Sequence record: MN453779.2
Strand: one strand, 5' to 3'
DNA length: 64,000 nucleotides
Shown here: positions 26,316 through 50,300 of the stretch, piece by piece
How the letters are laid out: every line of letters starts with the position of its first letter
Position numbering within the stretch: the first letter of the stretch is position 1
The notes under the pieces: generated by a model
The model's input: the letters and a program-made list of their open reading frames with translations, nothing else
The model's database searches: none
Told to the model about the DNA's origin: nothing
Program-made: the position numbers and the translations under genes

Positions 26316-27800
26316 ATGTCTATTAAAACACTAACTGAAATCCTTGGTCTTTCTCTTGAATTGAAAGATTATGAAGACAGAGTACAGAAAAGATACGATT
26401 ACATTCAAGAACAATTGAAGCTTGATCCTGAGTTTGTAGCTTATGACTATTTGGAATACTGGGATGGTCGTGCCGATATTCATTATATCATTGATAAGTA
26501 TGTTATTGACACTAAAGGTAATTATTACTTAAATAATAACGGCATTTGTTCTCCACTAAAGGATAAAGAGAATAAGTGGGGAAAGTGGGTAGCTATAAAC
26601 CAGAAATGCGAATATTTTCAAACCCGCCGCATTGTTGCTAGTATGTATGTGCCTAAATCAGATAGTATCTTATTTATTCCATATTGGAAATTGGACGTAA
26701 AATATAAGGATGGGGATAGTAAAAATAAAAACTTTGACAACCTTGACTGGAGTGAAATAAAAGAAGGAAAAGATTATTTAGCTAGTTTACCTAAAACTTT
26801 AACTGAAATCCTTGGGTTAAAGTATGATGAAACAATGAGTTACGAAGAACGTGTTCAAAAGCGTTACAATTACGTTAAAGAGCAATTGGAACTAGATCCT
26901 AACTATGAAGGTTGGGATGTGGTGGAATTTATTAGCGGTGGAATTTATCTAAAACACTTAGTGTGTTTTAATTACCTAATTTCTACCTCTGGTAGGGTTT
27001 TAACGACCGATAAAGACGAAAGAGGATATAAAATACTAACTGGAACGGTTGGTACGGATGAGTATAAGTTCCAAAATTTTCGCGTGAATAAAGATAGACA
27101 TCGTTGTACTATACACCGTGCAGTATCTTCCACGTTTATTTACAAACCACCGCACTACCAACAAAAATTAAATCGCCTGGTTGTTAACCACAAAGATTTA
27201 GACAAATTAAATAATCATTTTACTAATCTTGAATGGTGTACTACTAAAGAGAATGTCCGACATAGAGTTTTGGGATATCAGGCGACGAATATCTATTTCA
27301 ATACAATCTTCGAAGGGACAGTAGAAATAGATTGTAAATATAAAGGTGTTAAGTTTAAAGTTTTTGGCGGTGAAGGTTTGGAGAGTATAGGGTTAGGACC
27401 TAATACTTTAAGTGGGGTATTTACAAAAGGATATGAACTTTCATTTGGGTGTAGCTGGAAGATAATAAACCAAGAAGAAGCTGATAGACTTCCGGATATT
27501 CCTGAGTTTATTAAGGGCAAACTTCTTAATGATAGAAGTTTTATGGACTACCGCATTAAACCTACGAAGGGAACTGTTGTTAAGGACTGTGAATTTAAGG
27601 ACCTGGAGTTTGTTATATTCGGTAGGAGAGAGTTTGTTGGATCTGGTTTTGACCAAGGGTCTGTAGGTAAGGCAATGAAAACTGATACTTTACACCAGGG
27701 GTGTAAGTGGGAGTTTATTACTAGAGATGAGGCTGAACTGTTACCAAGAGGACTAACTAAAGAACAAATGAAAACTATTATTACTAAAAGATGGCCTTAA
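26316..27800 (+). CDS. HNH homing endonuclease with duplicated N-terminal module
   Basis: VNHKDLDKLNNHFTNLEWCT HNH motif; KTLTEILGL...RVQKRY module occurs twice; two C-terminal repeats. Confidence 0.85.
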   Translation: MSIKTLTEILGLSLELKDYEDRVQKRYDYIQEQLKLDPEFVAYDYLEYWDGRADIHYIIDKYVIDTKGNYYLNNNGICSPLKDKENKWGKWVAINQKCEYFQTRRIVASMYVPKSDSILFIPYWKLDVKYKDGDSKNKNFDNLDWSEIKEGKDYLASLPKTLTEILGLKYDETMSYEERVQKRYNYVKEQLELDPNYEGWDVVEFISGGIYLKHLVCFNYLISTSGRVLTTDKDERGYKILTGTVGTDEYKFQNFRVNKDRHRCTIHRAVSSTFIYKPPHYQQKLNRLVVNHKDLDKLNNHFTNLEWCTTKENVRHRVLGYQATNIYFNTIFEGTVEIDCKYKGVKFKVFGGEGLESIGLGPNTLSGVFTKGYELSFGCSWKIINQEEADRLPDIPEFIKGKLLNDRSFMDYRIKPTKGTVVKDCEFKDLEFVIFGRREFVGSGFDQGSVGKAMKTDTLHQGCKWEFITRDEAELLPRGLTKEQMKTIITKRWP

Positions 27801-27853: not shown

Positions 27854-28396
27854 ATGGAAAACATGCAATGGGTTTGTTACACAGATGGGAGTTGTCTTGA
27901 CCAAAACAGTGGAACAGGAGGAAGTGGCGCGTGGGCATTTCATGCTATTTTTGGAGAATCGATAGTAGAGAAGTCTTGTGGGTATTTTAAGACTACTAAT
28001 AATAGGATGGAGATATTAGCCATTATCTCTTTTCTAGAGGAGTTTCAAGAGCCCACTAAGGTTACTATACGAAGCGATTCTCAATACACCATTGATGCCG
28101 TTACTAAATGGATCTATGGTTGGATTAAGAATGACTGGGTAACTTCTCAGGGACAACCTGTAAAGAACAAAGACTTATTTGAACGATTGTTTAAATTGGT
28201 AAAGTTTCATACAGTGAAGTTTGAAAAAGTAAAAGCTCACTCTGGCATTATTGGTAATGAACGTGCTGATGAATTAGCCAAGGAAGCAGCAGGAAATCCA
28301 ACATTAGTTGATGAAGGTTATATACCTCCAGATCCTAATGAGGTTAAACCTGTGGTTGTAAAAAAACCTTGGTGGGTAAAATATAAAAAGAAATAA
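27854..28396 (+). CDS. rnhA: ribonuclease HI
   Basis: YTDGS, TTNNRMEILA, IRSDSQY, VKNKDL, KVKAHSGIIGNERADELA. Confidence 0.93.
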   Translation: MENMQWVCYTDGSCLDQNSGTGGSGAWAFHAIFGESIVEKSCGYFKTTNNRMEILAIISFLEEFQEPTKVTIRSDSQYTIDAVTKWIYGWIKNDWVTSQGQPVKNKDLFERLFKLVKFHTVKFEKVKAHSGIIGNERADELAKEAAGNPTLVDEGYIPPDPNEVKPVVVKKPWWVKYKKK

Positions 28397-28397
28397 A

Positions 28398-28427
28398 GTT
28401 CACCCAACTCTATTGAGTTGGGTGAAC
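28398..28427. terminator. 13-bp stem hairpin
   Basis: gttcacccaactc-tatt-gagttgggtgaac. Confidence 0.75.
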
Positions 28428-28435
28428 AATTCAGA

Positions 28436-28458
28436 ATAATTTATTTATTTTATATTAC
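28436..28458 (+). promoter_or_regulatory. putative early promoter facing tailspike A 3' end
   Basis: ATAATTT-atttattt-TATATTAC. Confidence 0.6.
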
Positions 28459-28603
28459 ATTGACCAAGTAAATGACATTGGTAGAACACGATCGTATATT
28501 CTATTACAACTTCAATAAATACAAACCCGGCGAAGCGGGGTAGTGTTTCACTCAAAAACTGGACCCGGGAGTGTTATTGCCCCGTCAATTACACCCGCAT
28601 TGA

Positions 28604-28705
28604 ATTGTACCTGAGCCGTACCGGCCATTGACAGTATTTTGGGTGACGTATTGGGTAGGTTCAACCAGAGCAAGCGCTAATAAGGATTCGTTGATACGAC
28701 GGTGA
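28604..28705 (+). pseudogene. relic C-terminus of small membrane (holin-like) gene
   Basis: ...VFWVTYWVGSTRASANKDSLIRR*; 18/20 aa identical to right-arm copy. Confidence 0.55.
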
Positions 28706-28711
28706 AAAGAA

Positions 28712-28734
28712 AAAGCCCCTGTGAAAGGGGCTTT
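28712..28734. terminator. bidirectional Rho-independent terminator of tailspike A
   Basis: aaagcccct-gtgaa-aggggcttt with A/U tracts. Confidence 0.85.
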
Positions 28735-28767
28735 ATTTTGCGGAGCATCTTCTGGTTGTGCCACTAG

Positions 28768-30732
28768 TCAAACATGTCGCACCACGCCCGTACAGCTATA
28801 TGTCTGCACCGAGCTGTAGAAACTGTCAAACGTCAGGCGAATAAACCCGCCATTATTGGACACAGCAACGGTTTTATCAAACCCATCATGTGACTTGGCT
28901 TTGTCGCCATAAATGTTACCAAACAGTTCATAAGCGCTTAACTCATCTGCTATCGTTATGCGGTACGCTAACAGAGCTGCGTGCTTATTGAATGCTATCT
29001 TTGTGTCTATGATTATAGAGAAAGTGGTGCCGGCTGTTTTTGAGTGCTCACAGAACGCCACCGTCCCTGCTTTAGGCCCCCCTGCCTTACCCTCGTAATT
29101 GAACGGCACTAGAGTGTTACCATGCACCTGAGTCTTAATCATCCCAAACCCAGTGGCCGAATCGAAAAGAATGTTTTCATGCCGAACTCTGGATTTCCCG
29201 CCAAGCGCGTAACCAGCCGGGATTGATGGGTAGCCGTTATTGGCGATGGGGACAGGGGCTATCTCGACCTCACCTAAATCGTTGTAGTTATCCAGCCCTG
29301 AGATTACATTTGGACAAGCAAGGAATCGGTTATTTTCATAAACATGAATTCGGGAGCCATTCGTTCCTCTGTTTATAGCTGTTCCGCATTTGTTGAAGAA
29401 GCAGTTATCAAAGGTCACATCATATTTGAAACCGCCAGCGGACAGGTCCACACCGATCCCAGAATCCCCCTCTAGGTAACACGTATCGAGCTTGATAGGG
29501 CCAGTCTCGCCGGAAATGATAATCCCGTTTGTGCACCCCTCAGCCGAGCAGCAATACAGAGTCTGGCCGTTAGCCCCGCTCGATATTTCAATCCCAGTGA
29601 CACGCCCACTTACAAACACCGATTCAATCGCGCAGACGTTGACAAAATCACGGAAGTAAAAAGCCGGCAACGTGGTTCCCCCTCCACTACCGCGAGAGAA
29701 CAGGTTAACGAAACGCCCGTAGAAACAGCGAGCAGCATAAACAGGTTGAGTACAGTTGGTGAAGTAGATGTTACTAAGCTCACTGTTGAACAGAAAGTTG
29801 TATAGATTAAATACCTTACCACAATCTCTAATACTGGCATTTTTTACAGCAGCCTGCCGAACCAGAATTGTTTCTGGTGGGGCACCGATGTTGCTTATGA
29901 CAGCGCCGCCGGATAAATACCCGCTCTGGAAAACGTCTACAGAACTCCCCAGACCCGGGCCAATAATTTCAGAGTTGCAGAAGTCTAGCTCTACGCAAGA
30001 TGGTACGATCACCGTTTCCGTCAACTTGTAAGATCTATATGGTGCGATTATGCGCCCACCGCCAGCAAGCGCGACATACAGTATCGCGGAGACGAATGCG
30101 GGTGAGTCATTAGTTGTGCCATCCCCCGCTGCGCCAAAGTCGAGGACGTTAAATATAAGCCTGGAGCGCAGTAGCTCACCGCTGCGATCAACAAACCCAC
30201 CGCTCGCTGGGTCAGTACCAGCGGCAACTACACCAGCAGGCCCGGAGAATACCTTACCAGTGCGCTCTTGCAGCAACACATCATTACTATTTACAAGAAC
30301 ACCACCTTGTTCAAAACTCCCTTCAACAAGATCATATCCTGCTTCTTGATAAGTTCTACGAAGTGCTTCTCTTGCTATTACACGTTCATCCCTAGTAACA
30401 ATACCCCATCCTTTCTTACCACCTGGGGTAGGAGAACTATTAGCTGGAACTACATAAGGTAATTTACCATTCCAACTGTACCAATATCCATCTGTTGGAT
30501 AAAAAACACATTTATCACGATCACCGATGCCTAAAGTGCCACCATTAACAAAGTCAAATCCTGCTGGTTTGAACCCAACATCTTTCAAAGCCTGTTGTAC
30601 AGTTTTGTGTTGTTTACCGAAACGATCCTGCCACAATGCAGCTGGGGAATTCATCGCATAATCAAACGAAATAGCGTTATCTTGTAAGTCTTCAGTTGCT
30701 GAAGACCCAATAGGGTTTTGTGTGAAAAACAT
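28768..30732 (-). CDS. tailspike A, polysaccharide depolymerase-type receptor-binding protein
   Basis: N-terminal anchor plus TSP/gp66-like docking modules; NVLDFGAAGDGTTNDSPAF pectate-lyase-3-like start; beta-helix; GC-rich C-terminal region. Confidence 0.85.
   Translation of the reverse strand: MFFTQNPIGSSATEDLQDNAISFDYAMNSPAALWQDRFGKQHKTVQQALKDVGFKPAGFDFVNGGTLGIGDRDKCVFYPTDGYWYSWNGKLPYVVPANSSPTPGGKKGWGIVTRDERVIAREALRRTYQEAGYDLVEGSFEQGGVLVNSNDVLLQERTGKVFSGPAGVVAAGTDPASGGFVDRSGELLRSRLIFNVLDFGAAGDGTTNDSPAFVSAILYVALAGGGRIIAPYRSYKLTETVIVPSCVELDFCNSEIIGPGLGSSVDVFQSGYLSGGAVISNIGAPPETILVRQAAVKNASIRDCGKVFNLYNFLFNSELSNIYFTNCTQPVYAARCFYGRFVNLFSRGSGGGTTLPAFYFRDFVNVCAIESVFVSGRVTGIEISSGANGQTLYCCSAEGCTNGIIISGETGPIKLDTCYLEGDSGIGVDLSAGGFKYDVTFDNCFFNKCGTAINRGTNGSRIHVYENNRFLACPNVISGLDNYNDLGEVEIAPVPIANNGYPSIPAGYALGGKSRVRHENILFDSATGFGMIKTQVHGNTLVPFNYEGKAGGPKAGTVAFCEHSKTAGTTFSIIIDTKIAFNKHAALLAYRITIADELSAYELFGNIYGDKAKSHDGFDKTVAVSNNGGFIRLTFDSFYSSVQTYSCTGVVRHV
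30187..30375 (-). repeat. shared tailspike junction module, copy A
   Basis: REALRRTY...DVLLQERTG...GFVD; exact blocks gaagcacttcgtagaac and tgctgcaagagcgcac in all three spikes. Confidence 0.9.
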
Positions 30733-30794
30733 ATAAAACCTCTTTCTATTAATAGGTAGTTAAAGAAGTCATTTAAGCTTCTTTAAAATCAGTT

Positions 30795-30803
30795 CATAAG
30801 ATC
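30795..30803 (-). promoter_or_regulatory. putative late promoter for tailspike A
   Basis: GATCTTATG on minus strand. Confidence 0.6.
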
Positions 30804-30812
30804 TGGGGAAAC

Positions 30813-30821
30813 GATTTTATG
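30813..30821 (+). promoter_or_regulatory. putative late promoter, back-to-back with previous
   Basis: GATTTTATG. Confidence 0.6.
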
Positions 30822-30848
30822 TTCATATACTTTAAGAAAGGTCTAATT

Positions 30849-31838
30849 ATGGAACTTGCTAATTTTAAAAAATCCAAGCTTCGGGAGTTTTATCTAACTG
30901 CCAAAGCGGATCTTCAGTTGGTTGAAACTAATATTCTTGGAAATAAAGAAAAATACGAGGGGTGTGAATCTTCCAGCGAAGAACATGCTCTTTTAATTCA
31001 AGTCGCTTCTTATGCCAAGGAAACCTATAATGCTAACGTCACACCAGATATCGATGGAATGGAAGGGTTTGCCGAGGCACTAAAAACTGGACTCAAGCGA
31101 GTAGCTGAATTATTCAAGTCAAAACCAAATAAAGAGCAATTGGCTGTTCTTAAGAAAAATGCCAGTGAGATCACAGCTGCAATAGATCTTTATAAAAGTT
31201 CCAAATGGTTGGACGCACAAACCTTTATCAATGTTGGTCATGTCAAGTTCAATACACCTAAGTTGTTTGGTGAAGTTAAAACAATCGATGATGTTAAAAA
31301 GATCATTGAAGAGATCACCAAAAAGTACGACGCTGTTTTTAAACCCACCTTGGACGACGCATGGAAACGCTTAAGCAAGGGTAGTTCAATTTTTAGCAAA
31401 TATGAAGATAAAGAACCTTCTGAAAAACTGATTAAAGAAGTGGCGGGGTTGGTTCCTATTGCACCGATCTTTAAACCATTCCCTAAAGATTTCATTACGA
31501 GCGCTCTGGGCGGAAATAAAGTCACTATCTCTATCTCGGCACTCACTAAAAGCGACGTTCAAAACGTTGTGGACTTGATGGTGGAGTTAAAGAAGTTCTT
31601 TTGGGAAAAAGAAGAAGCCATGGAAGTGTTACTTTTCGACCTGATGAGCTATGAAGAATATTGGGATAGCGATTTTTGGTCAGAAGTCCCAGAAGAAATT
31701 ATGACGAAGATGGAGAGCGCTACTGAATGGCGTAGCGTTAATGAAACCATCCTCGGACCTCTTTCTAAAGAGTTAGGTGGGATTGTCATGACCATCGGAA
31801 GATTTCTGGAAGATTGGATTCTTTACTCCATTAAATAG
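30849..31838 (+). CDS. putative internal head / virion protein
   Basis: DIDGMEGFAEALK region resembles cleaved head-protein families of phiKZ-like phages (recall); late motif upstream. Confidence 0.45.
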   Translation: MELANFKKSKLREFYLTAKADLQLVETNILGNKEKYEGCESSSEEHALLIQVASYAKETYNANVTPDIDGMEGFAEALKTGLKRVAELFKSKPNKEQLAVLKKNASEITAAIDLYKSSKWLDAQTFINVGHVKFNTPKLFGEVKTIDDVKKIIEEITKKYDAVFKPTLDDAWKRLSKGSSIFSKYEDKEPSEKLIKEVAGLVPIAPIFKPFPKDFITSALGGNKVTISISALTKSDVQNVVDLMVELKKFFWEKEEAMEVLLFDLMSYEEYWDSDFWSEVPEEIMTKMESATEWRSVNETILGPLSKELGGIVMTIGRFLEDWILYSIK

Positions 31839-31850
31839 TTATTTACTATG

Positions 31851-31878
31851 CCCCACCTAACCAAGTGGTTAGGTGGGG
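31851..31878. terminator. 12-bp stem hairpin
   Basis: ccccacctaacc-aagt-ggttaggtgggg. Confidence 0.75.
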
Positions 31879-31913
31879 TTATGTTTATAATAATTAAAAA
31901 TTTACTGGGTTCT

Positions 31914-31935
31914 ATATTTTTTCAGATAGATATTA
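31914..31935 (+). promoter_or_regulatory. putative early promoter
   Basis: ATATTTT-ttcagata-GATATTA. Confidence 0.65.
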
Positions 31936-31984
31936 TTAAGTTGTATAAACCAAGTAAGTTGTTCAATAGTCTAGGAGAAAGTAT

Positions 31985-34892: not shown

Positions 34893-34908
34893 CATTTTCT
34901 TATGCTCT

Positions 34909-34930
34909 ATAATTTTTGAGATAGATATTA
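34909..34930 (+). promoter_or_regulatory. putative early promoter
   Basis: ATAATTT-ttgagata-GATATTA. Confidence 0.65.
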
Positions 34931-34969
34931 TTATTGTGTAAGTATAGGGAGTATAAAAGGAAAAGTAGC

Positions 34970-39357: not shown

Positions 39358-39369
39358 ACTTTAATATCC

Positions 39370-39391
39370 ATAAATTTATAGACCGATATTA
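39370..39391 (+). promoter_or_regulatory. putative early promoter
   Basis: ATAAATT-tatagacc-GATATTA(C). Confidence 0.6.
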
Positions 39392-39488
39392 CTAGAGTGT
39401 ATAAACATGAATGATTTATCATTCACTTGTTTAAGATAAGAGATTCTTCAATCTCTTCAACCTTTAAGTATAGATAAGGAATATAATT

Positions 39489-40028: not shown

Positions 40029-40085
40029 ACCGTTCTGAGGAATCGCTATTAAAGTGGTTTGAATTTTCATAAGAGGAACAGATTA

Positions 40086-42395
40086 ATGTCTAGCAATAAA
40101 CCTTTCCCGTCGTCAGATCTTGACGTATTTAAAGAAAACAGTCTTATATTAGACAATTTTGTCAACAGTCAGGAAAACGAACATCCTGATCGTTTTGCAA
40201 GAAAAAGGCCAACTATTACAGGGATTATCAAAGAAGCTTTTAATGTCCGCACTGATATTTCCAATATGAATGAAACTCTTATTGGTCAAAGTCGTTGGGA
40301 TGCTGTTCCCAAGAACACTAGCTTAGCCCTAGGTGGGGATAATGGTGCTTTGAACAAACAAGCACAAGCTTTATTTAACCGAACCGAATTGTTGAAAACC
40401 CATGCAAGAGAAGCACTTCGTAGAACTTATTTAGAAGCTGGTTTAAATCTTGTTGAAGGTAGTTTTGAGGCTGGCGGTACTCTCGTAAAGGCTAATGACG
40501 TGTTGCTGCAAGAGCGCACCGGCAGGGTGTTCTCTGGTCCTGTCGGTGTAGTTGCCGCGGGGACTGACCCAGCGAGCGGTGAGTTTGTTGATAGAAGTTC
40601 AGTACTTCTAAGAGATATGTCGCAGAAAATATTCAGTACTACCGCGGCCGTGATATCAGCGGCAGCAACATTGAAAATCGGCGATTTAGTCAGCACAGCA
40701 GGTCACACTACGGTCGGGGTCGGGGCGGCAGATTACGTGGTCTCTACAGACATCGCCCGCCCTTTCTTGGACATTAGCTTGGGGGATGGACGGATAGCCA
40801 AAATGCTTATCAAGGAATACATAGACCCAGCTTCTTGTGGTGTTGATACAACTGGTGTTCAGCCGGCCTCGCTGGCGCTTGCTGAAATTTCAAAGCATGG
40901 TTCTATCTCGTGGATTGGTTCGCTTTATATAGACCAAGAGTTCATTTTCGCAGCAGGCAATGACCTGATAGGGCAAGGCCAGCATAAATCGAAGTTGTTA
41001 TTCAAGAATTCCGGTGTTGGCAAGGGTATCGTCAAGTCTACCAGGAGCCGATTCTATAACTTTGGTGTTACGTTAAAGGATTTTTTGGCTCCATTCGATG
41101 GGCAGATGATCACGGTATCAGTGCAGTATGATTACTATATCTACGGCACAGTCCCACGTGAATCAACTGGATATGACCGGCTGGTGTTGGATCACAGTAG
41201 TGATATTTATGCTGTCTCAACAGGTGGAACCAGCCCAAGCGGGGCATCAACAGGCCGCTTCTTGGTGCTGGATACAGGTGATATTAATGGCATCCCAATC
41301 CCCCCGCTAGCAACTCAGCTTGGTATTTACAAATCCCGGTTTGATAACTGCACTGCTATTGGTTTCTATTGTCCATTGACTTTGTTGAGCCGTACTGATC
41401 GCGCTAATCAAGGTGCTCCTTGGATGCACTCCAACCGATTCGCTGGTTGGGTTACAAAAAACAACGTGGTCGAGTTTGAGGCATTGATTCAGACGGTTAC
41501 ACCGAGAGCCGGGTCATTCACTGATAACAAGATAGAAGATTGGGTAACTCAGCCATACAAGAACTCTCAGCGCATCGCCACCATGGAAGGGGCTGGGTTC
41601 AAATTCGTGGACTGTTTCTTCTGGGATCAACACCTCTACCCAGACCAGAGCAAACTGATTGTACTGAGGAAATCAGCCACAGGGGACACAAATTGGATTG
41701 AAAGAAATTCTTTCTACAATGACCACAGACCATCACTGGAATTTGTGCGCTGTCCAATCACCAGAAATAAGATTTCTGTCGAGAATATGACGACAAATCT
41801 ATGGCCTGCTGTCATCAAAATCACCGATAAATTTGGCAATGGAGATTGTGTCGGTGATATACCCATACTTAGTAACATTACAACAGGGACCAATATATCG
41901 AGGTTCATGGCTGTTAACTTCACTACACCGCAGACGGTCGGTGCTGTAGCGCAGTGTACATTCAAAATTAAATCAAAATGGCCGTTAGCTACCGACCCAT
42001 TCCGGGGGGCCATCTACGCCATTGACATTGCTATCAACGTCAAGTTGACTGCTACGGGGTTTGAAGTGAAAACGCACTTGCTAACACCTTACACAGGAAT
42101 CAAAACAGGTATTGATATCTATGCAGATAACCCCCGCCTCGTTAACGGCGAGTACATGTTAGATATTGTTGCATCTCAGAACAGTGTGGCAGCGCCTTTC
42201 CCGTCAATACGACTCAATGACAGCCCTTTACAGAACGGGGACTGGCAGTTATCTAATTCATACGGTATCATTTTGCCTATTCCGTCTGGCCATGGGGCAA
42301 CGACACTATCTGACGCTGCGGTGAAGATAGTGGACACGTTAGATCTGATTGCAGCGAATACAGTCATATCAAAGACAACCGCAATCAGCATATAG
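40086..42395 (+). CDS. tailspike B, depolymerase-type receptor-binding protein
   Basis: ATG 40086 after GAGGA; distinct N-terminus (LGGDNGALNKQAQALFNRT), shared junction module, GC-rich beta-helix region. Confidence 0.8.
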   Translation: MSSNKPFPSSDLDVFKENSLILDNFVNSQENEHPDRFARKRPTITGIIKEAFNVRTDISNMNETLIGQSRWDAVPKNTSLALGGDNGALNKQAQALFNRTELLKTHAREALRRTYLEAGLNLVEGSFEAGGTLVKANDVLLQERTGRVFSGPVGVVAAGTDPASGEFVDRSSVLLRDMSQKIFSTTAAVISAAATLKIGDLVSTAGHTTVGVGAADYVVSTDIARPFLDISLGDGRIAKMLIKEYIDPASCGVDTTGVQPASLALAEISKHGSISWIGSLYIDQEFIFAAGNDLIGQGQHKSKLLFKNSGVGKGIVKSTRSRFYNFGVTLKDFLAPFDGQMITVSVQYDYYIYGTVPRESTGYDRLVLDHSSDIYAVSTGGTSPSGASTGRFLVLDTGDINGIPIPPLATQLGIYKSRFDNCTAIGFYCPLTLLSRTDRANQGAPWMHSNRFAGWVTKNNVVEFEALIQTVTPRAGSFTDNKIEDWVTQPYKNSQRIATMEGAGFKFVDCFFWDQHLYPDQSKLIVLRKSATGDTNWIERNSFYNDHRPSLEFVRCPITRNKISVENMTTNLWPAVIKITDKFGNGDCVGDIPILSNITTGTNISRFMAVNFTTPQTVGAVAQCTFKIKSKWPLATDPFRGAIYAIDIAINVKLTATGFEVKTHLLTPYTGIKTGIDIYADNPRLVNGEYMLDIVASQNSVAAPFPSIRLNDSPLQNGDWQLSNSYGIILPIPSGHGATTLSDAAVKIVDTLDLIAANTVISKTTAISI
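40404..40591 (+). repeat. shared tailspike junction module, copy B
   Basis: 40404-40430 is the exact reverse complement of 30349-30375. Confidence 0.9.
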
Positions 42396-42411
42396 GCTGA
42401 CTTATGAAATC

Positions 42412-42433
42412 AAAGCCCCTTCACAGGGGCTTT
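42412..42433. terminator. bidirectional terminator of tailspike B
   Basis: aaagcccct-tcac-aggggcttt, one base different from tailspike A terminator read in gene direction. Confidence 0.85.
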
Positions 42434-42701
42434 TCCATTTTGCAGTATTCCATTACTAAGTCCTGTACATCGATTTACCCTCAACCAGACTTCCTGTCTC
42501 ACCTGATCAAATGCGTCCTCAGTCTGTATCTGGGACACGAACACGGGGCGCGAATCCCCAACATGTGGATGTTGTATTGGATCTAATCAATTGATGTACA
42601 TTTCATAAATGTACACGTTGTAGTTTGCTCGACATCCATGCAATAATTACTATAGAAAATGAGCAAACATATTTGTAAACTAGATTAAAACAATTAATTT
42701 A

Positions 42702-42734
42702 AACTCTACTTACTCCTTAGGAGTAAGTAGAGTT
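42702..42734. terminator. 15-bp stem hairpin
   Basis: aactctacttactcc-tta-ggagtaagtagagtt. Confidence 0.7.
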
Positions 42735-42756
42735 ATTTTATATTCTTTATTTTATT

Positions 42757-42795: not shown

Positions 42796-43188
42796 ATGCA
42801 TAATACTGGGAATGACTTAGAATCGAACGATATTCTTGACTTTGAAGACAATACCGTCAATCTTGACATTCTAATGAATGCCGATCAAGAGTACTGGATA
42901 GACCGTCTTGGTAATAAGCGACCCACCATTGATTACGCTTTGCGTATGGCTGGGTTCACACCTGCTGGGTTTGATTTCACCACAGGTGGTGTTTTAAAGA
43001 ATGGTGATCGAAATAAATGCGTATTTAACCAAGCTGATCAAACTTGGTATAGTTGGTCAGGCGATCTTCCTTATAATGTAATTGCTGGTAGTACGCCTGG
43101 GGAAGGTTGGAAAGTACAAGTCACTCCTTCTGTTATTACCAAACTTCAAGAATTGGAAACTAGAATAACTGTTTTGGAAAATAAATAA
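42796..43188 (+). CDS. anchor-only tailspike paralog (no receptor-binding domain)
   Basis: Homologous to N-termini of spikes A and C (DRLGNKRPTID..AGFDF..GG.L...DRNK..YSW.G.LP), then short coiled coil. Confidence 0.8.
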   Translation: MHNTGNDLESNDILDFEDNTVNLDILMNADQEYWIDRLGNKRPTIDYALRMAGFTPAGFDFTTGGVLKNGDRNKCVFNQADQTWYSWSGDLPYNVIAGSTPGEGWKVQVTPSVITKLQELETRITVLENK

Positions 43189-43648: not shown

Positions 43649-43670
43649 ATAATTTCTTAAACCTATATTA
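43649..43670 (+). promoter_or_regulatory. putative early promoter for second HNH
   Basis: ATAATTT-cttaaacc-TATATTA. Confidence 0.6.
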
Positions 43671-43699
43671 TTGTAGAGAAGTATTAAGGAGTTATAGTT

Positions 43700-44746
43700 A
43701 TGATAAATGTTTATTTCTCGGAATTACCTAAAACTTTAACTGAAATATTAGAGTTAAAGTATGATGAAACAATGTCTTATGAGGAAAGAGTTCAAAAGCG
43801 TTACAATTATATTAAAGAACAATTGGAAAAGAATCCAGGGTATGAAGGATGGGATTATCTTGAAAATGTTAAATATGGATTAAAGTTTGAACACTTAATC
43901 ACCTTTGAATATATGATTTCTACTAGAGGTAGAATTTTAACTTTGTTTATGCAGGAAGGAATATATAAGGTACTTAAAGGTAAGTTATCCAATTATGGTT
44001 ATAGGGAACAAATCATATCAATTAATAAGTTGTCATATGGTTGTAAACCGCATAGAACATTATGCTCTACCTTCATACCTAAACCAAGTCATTATAAACA
44101 AGGAATAAATCGTTTAGTGGTTAATCATAAAGATTTAATTAAGTTGAATAATCACTTTACTAATCTTGAATGGTGTACTAATCAAGAGAATACCAGACAT
44201 CAATTAATAGAATATGGGAATAGAAATACTTACTTTAATTCAATATTCCAAGGAACCATAGAACTTGATTGTAAATATAAAGGCGTTAAGTTTAAAGTAT
44301 ATGGAACTGAAGGTCTAGAAGACATTGGGTTGGATGGTAATGCTTTGAGTAAAGTCTTTACCAAGGGTTACGAGCTATCTTTCGGGTGTAGTTGGAAATA
44401 TATAACCCAAGAAGAAGCTGATAAACTACCGGATATTCCTGAATTTATTAAGAATAAGTTTCTTAATGATAGAAACTATATGAATCATCGTATTAAACCT
44501 TTAAAAGGAACAGTTGTTAGGGAATGTGAATATAAAGGTTTAGAGTTTGTTATTTACGGTAAACAGGAATTGCAAAGCTTTGATATTAATCAAGGTAATG
44601 TTTCGGTTTCTATTGTTACTGGAAAGGTCATACACAGTTGTTTGTGGGAATATATTACTAGAGACGAAGCTGAACTATTGCAAAGGGGTTTAACTAAAGA
44701 GCAACAAAAAGTTATTGTTACTAAGAGAGGGCCTAATAAGAAGTAA
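43700..44746 (+). CDS. HNH homing endonuclease (paralog of 26316..27800 second module)
   Basis: VNHKDLIKLNNHFTNLEWCT; long shared nucleotide blocks with 26787-27790. Confidence 0.85.
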   Translation: MINVYFSELPKTLTEILELKYDETMSYEERVQKRYNYIKEQLEKNPGYEGWDYLENVKYGLKFEHLITFEYMISTRGRILTLFMQEGIYKVLKGKLSNYGYREQIISINKLSYGCKPHRTLCSTFIPKPSHYKQGINRLVVNHKDLIKLNNHFTNLEWCTNQENTRHQLIEYGNRNTYFNSIFQGTIELDCKYKGVKFKVYGTEGLEDIGLDGNALSKVFTKGYELSFGCSWKYITQEEADKLPDIPEFIKNKFLNDRNYMNHRIKPLKGTVVRECEYKGLEFVIYGKQELQSFDINQGNVSVSIVTGKVIHSCLWEYITRDEAELLQRGLTKEQQKVIVTKRGPNKK

Positions 44747-44803: not shown

Positions 44804-44812
44804 GATTTTATG
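44804..44812 (+). promoter_or_regulatory. putative late promoter for tailspike C
   Basis: GATTTTATG; its ATG was taken as start by the ORF track. Confidence 0.6.
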
Positions 44813-44842
44813 TACCTTAAGATAAACAATAGGAATACTGTT

Positions 44843-46981
44843 ATGACTAGATTTAATACAGGTAATGTCATTCCATCGCTAGCCGAAGAAGATTTTTATG
44901 ATAACTCCATGGCTTTAGATGAAGCCATGAATAGCACTGATCCAACTTGGAGAGATAGATTTGGAGTTGAGAAGCCTACGATCGACGCAGCTTTGAAATC
45001 TGCCGGGTTTATGCCGGCTGGATTTGACTTTGTAACTGGCGGGACTCTTCAACCTGGAGATCGCAATAAAGCTGTTTACAATCCTGCTCCTAACGGCGAT
45101 AATAATTGGTATCGTTGGAATGGTGCATTTCCGAAAGAAATTGCTGCTAATAGTCAACCTAATCCCAAAGATGAAAATAATTGGGTATTGGCACATTTTA
45201 GAATTGGAATAGTCGAAAAGGAAGCACTTCGTAGAACATATTTGGAAGCAGGTTATAATCTTGTTAACGGTAGCTTTGAACAAGGTGGGACGTTAGTAAA
45301 TAGTAATGATGTGCTGCTGCAAGAGCGCACAGGGAAAGTATTCACCGGCCCTGCGGGTATAGTTGCCGCCGGAACGAATCCGGCGAGCGGCGGGTTTGTT
45401 GATGTGTCGCCATTCGTATTGAAGACTGAGCCGCCACTGATAGCAAAAACAGGTTCATTCTCATCTGGTGGGCGTGCGGAATCTATGAAATCTGCGCTTC
45501 TTTCTTCAGACGGTTACTACTACACACCGAGAACTGGTGTTATCACAGCGGCTCCAGGATCATCTCCTAATTCTATGTGGGTCTGTGTGGGTCTGCTTAA
45601 CGGAGCGCCCATAGACGACATGCTAAACTGGCTTGATGGTCGCCCGCATCTAAATGCTTTCATTGCTGCTCGCGACAGCAAGTCAATTCGTGGCGGCGGG
45701 GTGGTCACTTTCCCTGCTGGCGATTACACGTTTGCTGATGAATTCGTGTGCGTAGATTACGTCAAGTTTGTGGGTGAAGATCGTAGCAAGTGTCGCATAT
45801 TTGGTGCAGCGGGTTCAGGAGCGGGAAAGGCTGTAGTGAGAGCTTGCAAGTCGCCTGTCGGTTCTGCTGACATACCGGAATATCTATCTTATTCGGGGTT
45901 TAGTAACTGCACAATTAACGGCAACGCAACTTGGGATGTTGGCCTTTACGTTCGCCACTGTACAAACGAATCTGTTTTCGATAACGTTACAGCGCAGAAC
46001 TGTAAAAAGGCTAACTCAATTTTTATCGGCGTCTTTTATGTTAGTGCCAAAAATCACGTAAGCCGAGACGCACGTGACTTGGGTGCTGTCATCGGTAAGA
46101 AGATTTTCAGCGAAGGCGGGCTTCGTGAGGTTAATGCTTCAGCTTTCAATAACCTCAGAGGCAATTACGCAGGACTTGACGACGCCTATGATCCGACCAC
46201 AAACCCATATGCAGGTGCCTGCATAACAATATGGACCGCTAACAGTTGCGCATTTGATTATGTTGGTGCCGAGAATGCTTACGGTGCTGGTGCTATTATC
46301 CGCAAAGGGATAAACAGCACAATCCCGAACTTGTATGTCGAGTCCAATGGGAAGGGCACTGCTGCTGTGGATAAGATCGGAGCCAGGATCATTGCTGCAG
46401 ATTTCCCTTCACTGATCATTGGTTCCCTCTTTGCAACAAGACAGCAGAAGATTTATCTGGAGGGGAGCTCACTGCTGCAAGTTGGCGAAATCTACTCTGA
46501 GTCTTTTGCAAATGGAATTTTCATGGGCACAGGCAAAGTGCTGTTGATGAATGGCCACAGCGCCAATAATTACATTGGGGCAGATCAAGCATTCATTAAT
46601 AACATTGAAACTAAACGCATTGCTCAGTTTGGGAATGTCCCTTTCACCAACTTCGCGAGCCTAGACTCCACAGCTGTTATTTTTGGCGAGGCAATGACAA
46701 ATGTCCAAGTGGTGATGGTGCCTAGAGTAACTTTAACCACGGCAGACCCGATAGTCATTGGGCTGTCAAATTCTCTATCCGGGGGGCAAGTGCTAGAATT
46801 TGGGACATCGTTTACTGCGGGAGTGCCTATTACCAAAACGTTCAGCAAAGTTTCTAAAGGTGCTGGAAGACTTACTCACCGGTCAAATTACCTGCCATCT
46901 ACAACAACAAACTTTGCAATGGACGTGTTCATTATTCAGTACGTTTGTGATTACCAGGCTATTTATAACAAGTGGTTTTAA
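44843..46981 (+). CDS. tailspike C, depolymerase-type receptor-binding protein
   Basis: ATG 44843 after AGGA; anchor like A; GGGVVTFPAGDY beta-helix start; GC-rich C-terminal region. Confidence 0.85.
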   Translation: MTRFNTGNVIPSLAEEDFYDNSMALDEAMNSTDPTWRDRFGVEKPTIDAALKSAGFMPAGFDFVTGGTLQPGDRNKAVYNPAPNGDNNWYRWNGAFPKEIAANSQPNPKDENNWVLAHFRIGIVEKEALRRTYLEAGYNLVNGSFEQGGTLVNSNDVLLQERTGKVFTGPAGIVAAGTNPASGGFVDVSPFVLKTEPPLIAKTGSFSSGGRAESMKSALLSSDGYYYTPRTGVITAAPGSSPNSMWVCVGLLNGAPIDDMLNWLDGRPHLNAFIAARDSKSIRGGGVVTFPAGDYTFADEFVCVDYVKFVGEDRSKCRIFGAAGSGAGKAVVRACKSPVGSADIPEYLSYSGFSNCTINGNATWDVGLYVRHCTNESVFDNVTAQNCKKANSIFIGVFYVSAKNHVSRDARDLGAVIGKKIFSEGGLREVNASAFNNLRGNYAGLDDAYDPTTNPYAGACITIWTANSCAFDYVGAENAYGAGAIIRKGINSTIPNLYVESNGKGTAAVDKIGARIIAADFPSLIIGSLFATRQQKIYLEGSSLLQVGEIYSESFANGIFMGTGKVLLMNGHSANNYIGADQAFINNIETKRIAQFGNVPFTNFASLDSTAVIFGEAMTNVQVVMVPRVTLTTADPIVIGLSNSLSGGQVLEFGTSFTAGVPITKTFSKVSKGAGRLTHRSNYLPSTTTNFAMDVFIIQYVCDYQAIYNKWF
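45221..45403 (+). repeat. shared tailspike junction module, copy C
   Basis: gtaaatagtaatgatgtgYtgctgcaagagcgcac shared with A (1 mismatch). Confidence 0.9.
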
Positions 46982-46984
46982 GCC

Positions 46985-47008
46985 AAAGCCCCTCAATCGA
47001 GGGGCTTT
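46985..47008. terminator. bidirectional terminator of tailspike C
   Basis: aaagcccctc-aatc-gaggggcttt. Confidence 0.85.
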
Positions 47009-47012
47009 CCTT

Positions 47013-47186
47013 TCACCGTCGTATCAATGAGTCTTTATTTGCACTCGTCCTGGTTGAACCAACCCGGTAGGTCACGCAAGACGTTAATATTCTTGATACT
47101 GGCCCAGCCATGTAAACCACGATATCCTTGTTCTCACCAGGAATAGCCCAGATAAACAGAGCGCCGATAATGGCTCCGGTTTTTGA
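47013..47186 (-). pseudogene. relic C-terminal part of small membrane (holin-like) gene
   Basis: SKTGAIIGALFIWAIPGENKDIVVYMAGPVSRILTSCVTYRVGSTRTSANKDSLIRR*; no proper start. Confidence 0.6.
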
Positions 47187-47281
47187 GTAAATACATTGCC
47201 CCCGCTTCGGCGGGTTTGTATTTATTGAAGTTGTAATAGAATGTACGATCGTGTTCTACTTGTCTCGCTTATTCTGTCAAT

Positions 47282-47304
47282 GTAATATACAATAAATATA
47301 TTAT
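47282..47304 (-). promoter_or_regulatory. putative early promoter facing tailspike C 3' end
   Basis: ATAATAT-atttattg-TATATTAC on minus strand. Confidence 0.6.
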
Positions 47305-47312
47305 TCTGAATT

Positions 47313-47342
47313 GTTCACCCAACTCAATAGAGTTGGGTGAAC
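47313..47342. terminator. 13-bp stem hairpin (copy of 28398..28427)
   Basis: gttcacccaactc-aata-gagttgggtgaac. Confidence 0.75.
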
Positions 47343-47347
47343 TTTAT

Positions 47348-50300
47348 TTATCTTTTCATTTCGACGTTAACTATTACATCCCAACTTCTTTCATTATCTG
47401 TTAAAATAATTCTTAGTTGTGTTTCCCCTATCTTACCAGAACTACTGACATTTATTCTGTATTTTCCATCTTCCACTAATTTAACTTTACTGTTAATAAC
47501 TGTTATGAAAGTAGGATCAAAATCAACTTTACCGATTTCTATTGCGTTAAGAGGAACATCAGGTTCATTGTACTTATCTAACTTAACAGTAAAATCTATA
47601 TCAGAATTCACATTAAGAACAGCTATTCCATCAGATACTTCCGAAACCTTAGGAATAACTGGATTAACTTCAATACCAACCTTACCTGAACTCACTGTTA
47701 TACCGCCTAAGTTTACACTAATAATAAACCCACCATTACCGCCCAAATGACTTAACATCAAATGCGATTGATAAATGCCATTTACTGGATCTATTAGTTC
47801 TATAAAACTATCGGTCCCGATAATGGTTGGTAAATTATTATCTCTATTTTGATACCCTACTCCAGCTGTTCTGGCGTTATAAATATAAGAACCAGCTTGG
47901 TCTTTTAGTTTATACAAAATAGCTTGTTTGGTACTAGCTGTAAGGTTATTAGTTAGTAATTCAACAGTTATCCCACTGACAACTCTTCTTGTTACTTGTA
48001 CTAATCCACCTACTTCCTTCCTATATAAGCTAACGTCATCTAACAATCTAACTTCCAAATCTATTTCGGAAATATCGTCTTCCCCCATAGGAACAGATTT
48101 AGTTGTTTCTAAAATTATCCCGTTAGGTTCAATTGACTTAACAAAGACTTCAATGGAAGATAAACTTACATTTACACTAACTCTTGGGTCATTAAGAGAA
48201 ACGCTAGCCCCGTTGTAAATAACAGAAACATTGAGTTTATTACTTAAATAAGACTCAATACTAACCACCCCATCCATAATAACTTTCAATGGATAACTTG
48301 GTGAGATATCGGTTATTACGCTTAGTTCCCCTAATAATCCAGGTTCATTAGGATCTATGCATCTCAGGATGGAAGTAACCAATCCTTGTTCTATTAAACT
48401 ATATCCAATAGTAATAAACTGATCAGTTACTTTCTTTAATCCACTAAAGGTTACATTGGGATGTAAAGTAGAAAGTTCGGGTTTATACAAGACTCGATTA
48501 TTTATCCGCTCACGTTTATTGTAAACGCAAACATCAAACTCTCCGCTTTCTAACTCCCTTCCTTCTATATCTTTAATTCCAGGAATTAAAGCTAAATCAG
48601 GTCCTGTATAACCTAAGATTTCAAACTCTTGTTCCCAAGAAAAGTCTTTCTCAATCCCATCTACCAAAATCTTAAACTTAAAGTTAACAGTCTGAAGACT
48701 AGTCTGAGTACCGCCGTCAACCACAATCCAAGTTTCTTTTATAGTCCAAGGATCAAAGTTAATTATCACTGGAGAAGTTTCACTATTCTCAACATTAACA
48801 GATCTAACTTTATCACTAGATTCATTACCATTAATGTAAACTTGGAATGGCAATGGTCCTTTTTGATATTTAGTCACTGTTTTGTTAAAGCTAGTTCTAG
48901 GTCTTAAATCAACAGTAGAGACTTTAATAACTTCAACATATAGTTTATCACTTCTGGTGTGCAGTTCACCATTACTAGCTGGGTGTTTTAATCCAAGATT
49001 AATACTATCGGTAATAACCATTCCAGGTGAATTAGAATCTTGAACTATTCCGTATCCAAAGCTCTCTGTATCGATCTGTGTTACATTTACAAGTTGTCTT
49101 TGACCAACCAGTCCTGTATTAAGTCCGCATTGATTTAAAGCTAATACAGACCCTTTTAAAGTAACTTGGTAATTGACATTACCAATATCACCTCTCTCCC
49201 CTTTAATTAAAACTGGTTCTAAATTAACCAATTCTAATTGTTCTTGTTCACCCAAGGGTTTAGTAACTTCCAATTCAACAAACAAATTACCTTTATTACC
49301 TTGGTAACTAAACTCTCCAATAATCAAATCTTTAAAACTAGAGTTGTAATCAGGGAGGATGGTTGTTGGAACACCTATATAAAGTAAACCATCTTTCCAA
49401 GTTTTGTCTAAAGTGTATTTGTCGTTAGTTAGTTTACAAGTTAGCCAGTTAGGGTATACGTCAGGGATAACTTCAGTTCCATTAACTTGACATTTAACAA
49501 CAATACCTAATTTGTATAAAGTAGAAGTTCTAATAGTTTCAGTTTGCGCTGAAACAATTAGATTACCAACTTCATCATGATTAACCACAAAACCTACTGT
49601 AACGACTTTAGAGAAGATGTAATCGTCATGGGTTACATTGATGCTGATTTCTACTTCATCGCTTAATACGGAGCCTGCAGAGCCTTTGATGAAGGTAAAA
49701 ATACTTTCTAGTTTATTAGGAGATTGTTTCCCAGAAATAAAACCATTTTTACTTCTGTAAGTTAATTCCGTTTTAGCGGTTACATCAACACCATTAGCAG
49801 TAAAGAGATTAGTAAACCTAACTTCTTCACCTCGTTTACCAGAAAAGGAGCTAGGGAAGTTATCAGTCACTGTATTAAGATCAAGTTGTTCTTGAACTAA
49901 CTCTTCTACAAATAAGTGTACCGGTTCTGTACCTACTGAGTCGTCGGTAATCAATACACCGCCCGATGTTAACTCGCTCTTACTAATATAAGTTTCATCT
50001 TCCCGATAGAACTCAGATTGCTCAAAGAACACATCGCCCATTAGTTCATTGAATTTAGCTAACCCAAAAGCATCTTCGTGTTTAACACAATACCCTAAAG
50101 CATTTCTCCAAACTAAGTTAAGTAGTTTCCCCTGTACTTCTTTCCTATTAAACTTATTCTTAAAATCAGTTAAATTATTACAAACAACAACTTCTCTATT
50201 AAAGTCTTTAGCAATAGTCAACAAGTTAACTGTGGAAACAGGAATATCTACTCTAGCAAATGACTTAGCGCGCTTCACTAAACAGATCTTCTTAGACCCA

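What the first reader, a model, noticed from the sequence alone, without database searches (positions are those of the whole stretch)
28604..28705. Holin-like gene relic with mostly synonymous divergence between copies: a 3' recombination arm
The last 20 codons of the two relics (VTYWVGSTRASANKDSLIRR vs VTYRVGSTRTSANKDSLIRR at 47013-47075 minus) differ by 9 synonymous and 2 non-synonymous codons. That is purifying selection, yet neither copy has an intact gene. The simplest reading is that each copy was refreshed from a different donor in which the gene is functional. The longer right copy (IIGALFIWAIPGENKDIVVYMAG...) resembles small multi-TM phage holin-like proteins (recall). Caveat: one opposite-strand frame shares third positions, but it has a stop in the right copy.
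Basis: partly seen in the sequence, partly recalled or inferred. Interest (0 to 1): 0.65.

Follow-up and report, generated by a model that had tools for sequence, protein, structure and literature searches.

The report
Lysis-gene scars beside swapped phage tailspikes
The two "relics" in this Aeromonas jumbo phage are cut-off ends of a lysis gene from small phages, carried in with imported tailspike genes, so they record where the host-recognition genes came from; this is a clear example of known phage mosaicism, not a new mechanism.

Summary
The window is Aeromonas jumbo phage PS2 (Ferozepurvirus). The last 20 codons of the two relics differ at 12 bases, 10 of them at third positions (9 synonymous and 2 replacement codons). 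Random substitutions do this well in 2 of 50,000 trials.

The relics are truncated 3' ends of a 166-169 aa membrane-protein gene (phrog_1544, no Pfam). That gene is intact in small Aeromonas phages, where it follows three unrelated endolysin types. It lies tail-to-tail with a tailspike gene in KLEA5 and about ten IMG/VR contigs.

Relics with other truncation points lie beside convergent spikes in pAEv1810, phiA047 and phiA005. A second relic layer, the last ~40 codons of a Guernseyvirinae-type helicase, travels with the same cassettes and flanks PS2's middle spike. The left "relic" region also holds the antisense 3' end of an older tail-fibre gene.

Spike bodies and relics have 47-51% GC, against 34-40% for resident genes. 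The synonymous pattern is therefore inherited from two different functional donor alleles; it is not selection acting in PS2.

Use as a recombination arm is partly supported. PS2 and ACP1 share the right relic's junction and first 85 bases, then diverge, and intact donor genes show breakpoints there. At the left locus, however, the PS1/PS2 swap boundary lies outside the relic. The donors of the spike bodies were not found. Other first-reader notes on this window raise the same cassette idea.

The parts
28398..28427 (.). Hairpin 1 of the left 3' module, just after the RNase H stop codon
   Evidence: Inverted repeat I3/D9; terminator-like site
28428..28545 (.). AT-rich spacer plus hairpin 2 (about 28523-28545). 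Hairpin 2 is the terminator of an older minus-strand tail-fibre gene. PS1 and PS2 are 98% identical up to 28540.
   Evidence: The right copy of hairpin 2 scores as a terminator in the spike's direction. phiA009 has the same hairpin after its tail-fibre gene.
28548..28658 (-). Relic of the last 36 codons plus stop of an older tail-fibre/tailspike gene (ends ...TLPGPVFE*)
   Evidence: 55% identity to the C-terminus of the phiA009 tail fibre, E 6e-11; translations; blastn hit H7
28643..28705 (+). Left relic: codons 148-167 plus stop of the phrog_1544 lysis-cassette gene. It is joined to the older fibre relic at a 3-4 nt microhomology.
   Evidence: 100% amino-acid identity to intact genes of L009 and L012; junction alignment
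28712..28734 (.). Terminator hairpin of type B, shared with donor phages L009, L012, L015 and KLEA5 and with PS2's middle spike
   Evidence: (I7)
28768..30186 (-). Imported receptor-binding body of tailspike 1 (pectate-lyase-like beta-helix), 49% GC
   Evidence: Similarity to PS1 and pAEv1810 stops at 30187; GC; Pfam; closest known relative only 36% identical
30187..30375 (-). Conserved junction segment of tailspike 1 (about codons 119-182), the 5' crossover zone
   Evidence: 77-84% identical to the segments at 40404-40597 and 45210-45403 (I1/I2/D2). 72-84% identical to small-phage spikes. All comparisons between genomes break at its edge.
40404..40597 (+). Junction segment of tailspike 2
40598..42395 (+). 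Imported body of tailspike 2, 47% GC; found only in PS1 and PS2
42407..42440 (.). Terminator of type B after tailspike 2
   Evidence: I7
42441..42552 (-). Decayed relic, with a frameshift, of the last ~40 codons of a Guernseyvirinae-type helicase gene. The junction lies about 10 nt past the donor's holin-like stop codon, so no holin-like codons remain.
   Evidence: The phiA005 copy is 88% identical in protein to the Shemara helicase C-terminus, E 4e-27.
45210..45403 (+). Junction segment of tailspike 4
45404..46981 (+). Imported body of tailspike 4, 47% GC
   Evidence: 66.5% identity to a P2-like phage fibre and 47% to podovirus fibres, all from phages of the same host strain; similarity to ACP1 stops at 45410
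46985..47008 (.). Terminator hairpin of type A, shared with L011, L013, L014, L018 and phiA047
47013..47177 (-). Right relic: codons 114-167 plus stop of the phrog_1544 gene. It has no start codon and five replacements relative to intact genes (V117I, Q139P, G142R, W151R, A157T).
   Evidence: (phrog_1544 E 3e-5). PS2 and ACP1 are identical over 47125-47209 and 84% identical beyond, so a crossover lies inside the relic.
47173..47190 (+). Last five codons plus stop (APVFE*) of the same older tail-fibre type, overlapping the relic's start by about 5 nt
47196..47342 (.). Right copy of hairpin 2, AT-rich spacer and hairpin 1; 90% identical to the left module in inverted orientation
   Evidence: (I3)

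Best explanation
The two relics are non-functional scars. Each is the cut-off 3' end of a small membrane-protein gene (phrog_1544, a putative holin or lysis factor). In small Aeromonas phages of about 40-50 kb this gene is intact, follows the endolysin gene and lies tail-to-tail with the tailspike gene.

When a spike's receptor-binding body moved into the jumbo-phage lineage, the 5' crossover fell in a conserved ~190-nt junction segment inside the spike gene. The 3' end was joined illegitimately, at a few bases of microhomology, somewhere in the convergent neighbour gene. A piece of that neighbour came along with the spike.

The left and right relics come from different donor alleles. In donors this part of the protein is almost invariant while silent sites are nearly saturated, so any two alleles differ almost only synonymously. 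That explains the apparent purifying selection without a gene.

Once in place, the scar stays 80-90% identical to many donor genes and can act as a homologous 3' crossover site in later swaps.

Shown: the identity of the relics, the donor context, the independent truncation points, the foreign GC content and a crossover inside the right relic.

Inferred: the direction of transfer (small phage to jumbo phage), the illegitimate-then-homologous order of events, and the holin function.
For: - **Identity of the window:** it is Aeromonas phage PS2.
- **Codon-position pattern:** confirmed as described.
- **Constraint in donors:** intact genes show, for example, 22 synonymous against 1 replacement codon over the last 54 codons (L009 vs L012).
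- **Lysis context:** the intact gene follows SLT, GH108 and phrog_3108 muralytic genes.
- **Spike context:** in KLEA5 and about ten IMG/VR contigs (L009-L014, L017-L019) its stop codon lies 28-130 nt from a convergent spike's stop codon.
- **Independent junctions:** there are at least five, at codon 114 (PS1, PS2-right, ACP1), 115 (pAEv1810), about 140 (phiA047), about 143 (phiA005, L021) and 148 (PS2-left), plus one just past the stop codon (PS2 middle spike).
- **Different donors:** the left and right copies carry different donor-pool terminator types.
- **Second relic layer:** a helicase 3' end sits beside the same spikes.
- **Composition:** imported parts have 47-51% GC, resident genes 34-40%, and KLEA5-like phages 48-50%.
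- **Crossover inside the relic:** PS2-right and ACP1-right share the junction and 85 identical bases, then differ at 10 synonymous and 4 replacement codons; the 4 replacements are all private to PS2.
- **Breakpoints in intact genes:** L009 switches from the 62AhydR11PP type to the L013 type at about nucleotide 385, and L015 switches at about nucleotide 450.
Against: - No donor was found that carries a PS2-type spike body next to an intact gene, so co-transfer of relic and spike is inferred from adjacency and GC only.
- Between PS1 and PS2 the swapped block at the left locus runs from 28541 to 31862, with its 3' boundary at hairpin 2 and not in the relic. The left relic was therefore a passenger in that event.
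- At 80-90% identity the perfect-match runs in the relic are short, so it would be a weak substrate for host RecA.
- pAEv1810's relic starts within one codon of the PS2-right relic and shares V117I, yet has different upstream DNA. This is unexplained and may mean fewer independent captures than counted.
- Holin function is untested. Pfam and NCBIfam give nothing, and the PF11351 model finds no match.
Confidence: 0.62

Rival explanations
1. Pure scar: the relics hitch-hiked exactly as described but never serve as arms for exchange with small-phage donors. The mosaic inside the right relic reflects ordinary homologous recombination between two relic-bearing jumbo phages, which can cross over anywhere in this patchy region.
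For: PS2 and ACP1 alternate between identical blocks (159 nt and 85 nt) and blocks of 80-85% identity across the whole module, not only in the relic. The PS1/PS2 swap boundary at the left locus lies at hairpin 2, outside the relic.
Against: The 3' half of the relic differs between ACP1 and PS2 mostly at synonymous sites, and ACP1 has the helicase-relic segment there while PS2 lacks it. At least one of the two halves therefore came from a functional donor allele after the shared junction formed. Intact donor genes also show breakpoints in the same 120 nt.
Confidence: 0.28
2. The repeated module is functional today. It could be a promoter-driven small RNA of about 270 nt with conserved ends, a 3' UTR or terminator unit for the spikes, or a short peptide, and that function would explain its conservation.
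For: A sigma-70-like site with 10 of 12 matches lies at 28472-28500 in the left copy. Hairpins bracket the region. The right relic is an open 60-codon frame.
Against: The promoter-like site is not found at the matching place in the right copy, and the counts are near shuffle expectation. No Rfam family matches. Neither relic has a start codon. The pAEv1810 copy has an in-frame TAG and a frameshift. AVP1 lacks the whole module at both loci, and ACP1 lacks it at the left one. A third-position pattern points to protein-level selection, not RNA-level selection.
Confidence: 0.06
3. Intragenomic duplication: one relic-plus-module was copied within the jumbo phage genome in inverted orientation, and the two copies then drifted apart.
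For: The flanking 162-nt non-coding module is 90% identical between the two loci, and both keep the ...PVFE* end of the same older fibre type. The module and an older spike probably were duplicated.
Against: Drift would spread changes over all codon positions, whereas 10 of 12 are at third positions. The relics start at codons 148 and 114, have different junction partners and are followed by different terminator types.
Confidence: 0.03

Closest known systems
Modular tailspike exchange in P22-like, SP6/K1-5-like and Ackermannviridae (CBA120-type) phages (own knowledge of the literature; not retrieved here)
   Same: A conserved N-terminal virion-anchor part (Pfam Tail_spike_N) is joined to interchangeable receptor-binding beta-helix bodies. 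One genome carries several spikes. Short conserved sequences lie at the cassette borders.
   Different: The 3' border here is not a dedicated intergenic sequence but the cut-off end of the donor's convergent neighbour gene. Two such layers, holin-like and helicase, are stacked, and the exchange spans jumbo myoviruses, 115-120 kb Plateaulakevirus and 40-50 kb phages.
Mosaic-junction models for lambdoid phages: illegitimate recombination followed by selection, versus conserved boundary sequences (Hendrix/Juhala/Clark; own knowledge)
   Same: Novel joints lie at or near gene ends, gene fragments are left at the joints, and later homologous exchange occurs through shared flanks.
   Different: Both processes can be read at one locus. 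There are five or six different illegitimate truncation points in the same neighbour gene, plus a homologous crossover inside one scar.
Pfam PF11351 GTA_holin_3TM
   Same: Similar size and layout: a glycine-rich N-terminal hydrophobic helix, a coiled-coil middle and C-terminal membrane helices, with a position next to an endolysin. One feature-similar Atlas cluster has 11% of its members with this family.
   Different: The family model finds no match at E of 1 or less in five phage records that carry the intact gene, and hmmscan gives nothing. It is not a member by sequence.
Guernseyvirinae (Jersey-like) phage layout: helicase gene facing the tailspike
   Same: The second relic layer is 88% identical in protein to the last 42 residues of the Salmonella phage Shemara helicase. 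In Shemara the helicase gene points at the spike gene, with three small genes between them.
   Different: In the Aeromonas phages only the last ~40 codons remain, wedged between the holin-like gene (or its relic) and the spike's terminator.

Membership tests
PHROG phrog_1544 (unknown function) | Significant match to the family profile over its C-terminal part | tested here: met
   The intact 62AhydR11PP protein scores E 2.9e-29 over profile positions 1-191. The right relic scores E 3e-5 over positions 134-192. The left relic (20 aa) is too short for the profile but is 100% identical to intact members.
Holin (functional class) | Small protein with at least one membrane helix and a short charged C-terminal tail | tested here: met
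   166-169 aa. Hydropathy peaks at residues 16-40 and 99-128, a further moderately hydrophobic stretch at about 132-153, and a basic tail ...TRASANKDSLIRR.
Holin (functional class) | Encoded next to the endolysin in a lysis cassette | tested here: met
   The gene follows SLT (KLEA5, L013), GH108 plus PG_binding_3 (L012) and phrog_3108 'lysozyme' (62AhydR11PP, 4_D05) genes.
Holin (functional class) | Forms lethal membrane lesions that release the endolysin | not testable with these tools
   No experiment was found. The 4_D05 paper does not discuss this gene. The UniRef name 'Holin' is automatic.
Pfam PF11351 GTA_holin_3TM | Match to the family HMM above its cut-off | tested here: not met
   No match at E of 1 or less in five records that carry the intact gene; none by hmmscan.
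Tailspike cassette with homology arms | Conserved 5' segment inside the spike gene at which similarity between genomes breaks | tested here: met
   The segments 30187-30375, 40404-40597 and 45210-45403 are 77-84% alike. PS2 compared with PS1, ACP1, AVP1 and pAEv1810 breaks at their edges.
Tailspike cassette with homology arms | The 3' conserved sequence is used as a crossover site | tested here: inconclusive
   A crossover lies inside the right relic and in intact donor genes, but the left-locus boundary is at hairpin 2, outside the relic.
Invertible segment / shufflon between the inverted repeats | Both orientations of the 18.6-kb segment occur among relatives, with near-identical crossover sites | tested here: not met
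   Gene order between the repeats is collinear in PS1, PS2, ACP1, AVP1 and pAEv1810. The arms are only 81-90% alike. The presence of a site-specific recombinase was not tested.

The most novel reading that the evidence does not exclude
The stacked neighbour-gene relics form a readable stratigraphy of a tailspike cassette's travels: Guernseyvirinae-like siphovirus, then KLEA5/Kunmingvirus-like small phages, then Plateaulakevirus and jumbo Ferozepurvirus. The near-invariant 3' end of the donor lysis gene would act as a portable homology arm that couples spike exchange across unrelated Aeromonas phage families. Cassette itineraries and the direction of host-range gene flow could then be inferred from scars alone.
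Probability: 0.25. Interest if true: 0.6.

Novelty: new member of a known kind. Interest (0 to 1): 0.42.

Why it matters
Tailspikes decide which bacterial strains a phage can attack, so knowing how they move matters for phage ecology and for choosing or building therapeutic phages against Aeromonas. These scars give direction as well as similarity. A truncated lysis gene and a truncated helicase gene beside a spike show that the spike came from genomes where those genes are whole. They also show, at one locus, both steps long proposed for phage mosaicism: an illegitimate first join, then homologous re-use of the shared flank. If the pattern is general, unannotated 3' flanks of receptor-binding genes could be mined to trace spike traffic between phage families.

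Tried and rejected
- **Pfam, NCBIfam and PF11351:** gave no family for the intact protein.
- **Protein Atlas:** A protein returned by the word search gave only a weak pointer to PF11351.
- **Donors of the spike bodies:** tblastn against phages, IMG/VR scans and two metagenome scans found no close relative beside an intact gene. The best relative of spike 4 is in a P2-like phage and in a prophage-like contig without the gene.
- **Exact junction sequences:** neither relic junction occurs in IMG/VR.
- **pAEv1810 139-codon minus-strand frame:** it lies next to that phage's relic but has no homologue, so I cannot call it an older spike fragment.
- **RNA family:** no Rfam match. The promoter scan was near chance.
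- **Literature:** full-text searches gave no description of these relics and no experiment on the gene.
- **Not attempted:** structure prediction, complex prediction and read mapping, because they would not change the verdict.

Full report
**What the window is**

The stretch around the finding is 100% identical to Aeromonas phage PS2 (MN453779.2, 240 kb, genus Ferozepurvirus); window position equals record position minus 124,000.

The region from 28.4 to 47.4 kb holds three full tailspike genes: 28768-30732 (-), 40059-42395 (+) and 44810-46981 (+). It also holds an anchor-only stump of a fourth (42796-43188), with structural genes between them.

Two ~340-nt modules lie in inverted orientation at the 3' ends of the first and last spike. 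The non-coding part (28379-28540 vs 47200-47361) is 90% identical. A second block (28639-28712 vs 47006-47079) is 81% identical.

**Check of the observation**

The last 20 codons are 28643-28702 (+) and 47016-47075 (-), each followed by TGA.

- They differ at 12 nucleotides: 2 at first, 0 at second and 10 at third codon positions.
- Twelve randomly placed substitutions leave 2 or fewer residues changed in 2 of 50,000 trials. The binomial P is 5e-4 for one phase.
- The opposite-strand frame that shares third positions is open on the left and stopped on the right.
- Neither copy has a start codon.

One correction concerns the coordinates. Only 28643-28705 is holin-like. Positions 28548-28658 read on the minus strand encode the last 36 residues plus stop of an older tail-fibre gene, ending ...TLPGPVFE*. 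This fragment is 55% identical to the C-terminus of the phiA009 (Plateaulakevirus) tail fibre, E 6e-11. Hairpin 2, which follows that stop codon, is also found after the phiA009 gene.

The two fragments meet at a 3-4 nt microhomology near 28641-28645. On the right, only five codons of the same fibre end (APVFE*) remain, overlapping the relic's first codons by about 5 nt.

**What the relic gene is**

The right relic matches phrog_1544 (unknown function) at E 3e-5. A full 167-aa member lies in Aeromonas phage 62AhydR11PP and scores E 3e-29.

- The word search returned 290 related proteins, and tblastn found 114 phage records from Aeromonas, Vibrio, Pseudoalteromonas and others.
- Pfam and NCBIfam give no family.
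- The PF11351 (GTA_holin_3TM) model finds nothing in five records that carry the gene. One feature-similar Atlas cluster has 11% of its members with that family.
- The protein has a glycine-rich hydrophobic N-terminal helix, a charged coiled-coil-like middle, a strong membrane segment at residues 99-128, a weaker one after it, and a basic tail.
- It follows three unrelated muralytic genes: SLT in KLEA5 and L013, GH108 plus PG_binding_3 in L012, and phrog_3108 'lysozyme' in 62AhydR11PP and 4_D05.

I therefore call it a lysis-cassette membrane protein and a putative holin. The function is inferred from position and hydropathy, not shown, and the one paper on 4_D05 does not treat it.

**Where the intact gene sits**

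In vB_AveS_KLEA5 the gene ends 83 nt from the stop codon of a convergent, annotated tailspike.

Thirteen IMG/VR loci were found with the right relic as query. Twelve carry an intact 166-172 aa gene. In L009/L010, L011, L012, L013, L014, L017, L018 and L019 a large opposite-strand gene ends 28-130 nt downstream. In 62AhydR11PP two genes intervene.

**Other relics**

Truncated copies beside convergent spikes occur with different start points (L012 numbering):

| Phage and locus | Relic starts at |
|---|---|
| PS1-right, PS2-right, ACP1-right | codon 114 |
| pAEv1810-left (also has an in-frame TAG and a frameshift) | codon 115 |
| phiA047 (Plateaulakevirus, 122 kb) | about codon 140 |
| phiA005 (49 kb) and contig L021 | about codon 143 |
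| PS2-left | codon 148 |

The flank of PS2's middle spike begins about 10 nt after the donor's stop codon, so it keeps no holin-like codons.

**A second relic layer**

An optional 100-170-nt segment lies between the holin-like stop codon and the terminator. It is present in L009, L012, L016, phiA005, pAEv1810-left and ACP1-right, and it forms the PS2 middle-spike flank at 42441-42552.

This segment is the last ~40 codons of a helicase gene of Guernseyvirinae type. It is 74-83% identical in DNA to Salmonella, Hafnia, Enterobacter and Serratia phages, and 88% identical in protein to the Shemara helicase end, E 4e-27. In Shemara the helicase gene points at the spike gene.

In phiA047 the order of the two relics is reversed, as expected if a holin-relic cassette replaced a spike that already had a helicase-relic flank.

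**Why the differences are synonymous**

In donors the last 54 codons are almost invariant in protein, while silent sites are nearly saturated. L009 vs L012 gives 22 synonymous and 1 replacement codon. L012 vs L013 gives 14 and 0. Any two donor alleles would therefore look like the left-right pair.

- The left relic has no replacement relative to most intact genes.
- The right relic has five replacements: V117I, which is shared with ACP1 and pAEv1810, and Q139P, G142R, W151R and A157T, which are private. This fits decay after capture.
- The two copies are followed by the two different terminator types seen in the donor pool.
- Spike bodies, junction segments and relics have 47-51% GC, against 34-40% for resident genes. 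KLEA5-like loci have 48-50%.

The pattern therefore reflects selection in two different donors, not selection in PS2.

**Is the relic a recombination arm?**

For:
- PS2-right and ACP1-right share the same junction and are identical over 47125-47209. They then fall to about 84% identity, with 10 synonymous and 4 replacement codons. ACP1 has the helicase segment there and PS2 does not, and the spike bodies differ from 45410 onward. A crossover therefore lies inside the relic.
- Intact genes are recombinant in the same zone. L009 follows the 62AhydR11PP type for about 385 nt and then the L013 type at 95%. L015 switches at about nucleotide 450.

Against:
- PS1 and PS2 are 98% identical up to 28540 and again from 31863. 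The swapped block therefore contains the left relic, and its 3' boundary is hairpin 2.
- The whole module is patchy between ACP1 and PS2, including a 159-nt identical block at 47300-47458. Crossovers are thus not confined to the relic.

I rate 'scar' as near certain and 'scar re-used as an arm' as more likely than not.

**The 5' border**

All comparisons between genomes break at the edge of a ~190-nt segment: 30187-30375, 40404-40597 and 45210-45403. These segments are 77-84% alike and 72-84% identical to small-phage spikes. The segment lies downstream of the Tail_spike_N domain.

**What could not be tested**

No close relative of any PS2 spike body lies next to an intact gene in the phage, IMG/VR or metagenome collections. 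Whether each relic is closest to its own spike's donor therefore remains open.

The near-coincident start of the pAEv1810 and PS2-right relics, with different upstream DNA, is also unexplained.

**Rivals**

- Intragenomic duplication with drift is contradicted by the codon-position pattern, the truncation points and the terminators.
- A present-day function as an RNA or peptide is unlikely. There is no start codon, the pAEv1810 copy is broken, the module is absent from AVP1, no Rfam family matches and the promoter evidence is weak.
- Inversion of the 18.6-kb segment is not seen in five genomes.

**Comparison with what is known, and novelty**

This is modular spike exchange and mosaic-junction scarring, both long described for other phages (own knowledge). 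No paper describing these relics was found.

It is a clear new example with one useful twist, the stacked neighbour-gene relics that give direction to the transfers. It is not a new kind of system. Other first-reader notes on this window propose the same cassette idea.

Noticed in passing
window 42441-42552 (also L007 5071-5202, L008 4827-4939, L012 about 4170-4250): Relic of the last ~40 codons of a Guernseyvirinae-type helicase beside tailspike terminators in several unrelated Aeromonas phages. It is 74-83% identical in DNA to Salmonella, Hafnia and Enterobacter phage helicase genes.
   Followed up: yes
window 42796-43188 and 43700-44746: The third tailspike is reduced to its 130-aa anchor domain (Tail_spike_N) in PS1 and PS2, whereas AVP1, ACP1 and pAEv1810 have a full-length spike there. 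PS2 alone has an HNH endonuclease gene inserted between the following 133-aa gene and spike 4; it is 70-78% identical to the one at 26316-27800.
   Followed up: partly
window 30804-31862: A 339-aa gene (30819-31838) next to spike 1 is present in PS2 and pAEv1810 but absent from PS1. It lies inside the block swapped between PS1 and PS2.
   Followed up: partly
window 47300-47458: PS2 and ACP1 are identical over 159 nt (the end of the 1060-aa gene plus hairpin 1), flanked by blocks of about 80-85% identity. This run length was never reached in 20,000 random placements, so there is fine-scale gene conversion between jumbo phages.
   Followed up: partly
L009 3665-4165 (IMG/VR contig): An intact phrog_1544 gene is itself recombinant. 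Its first ~385 nt are of 62AhydR11PP type (80-93% identity) and its last ~120 nt are of L013 type (95%).
   Followed up: yes
L003 6169-6588 (pAEv1810, annotated hypothetical protein): A 139-codon minus-strand frame lies between hairpin 2 and the decayed relic, where an older spike's 3' end would be expected. It has no homologue in PHROGs or the phage collection.
   Followed up: yes
window 31911-31945, 34906-34940, 39367-39401, 43662-43696: Four copies of a 35-nt AT-rich direct repeat lie upstream of plus-strand genes. They may be phage promoters.
   Followed up: no
window 42705-42737; L024 and L025 after RNase H: A different AT-rich hairpin is the terminator next to spikes in AVP1 and ACP1 and recurs after PS2's middle-spike flank. 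It looks like the resident terminator type of the genus, as opposed to the GC-rich imported ones.
   Followed up: partly
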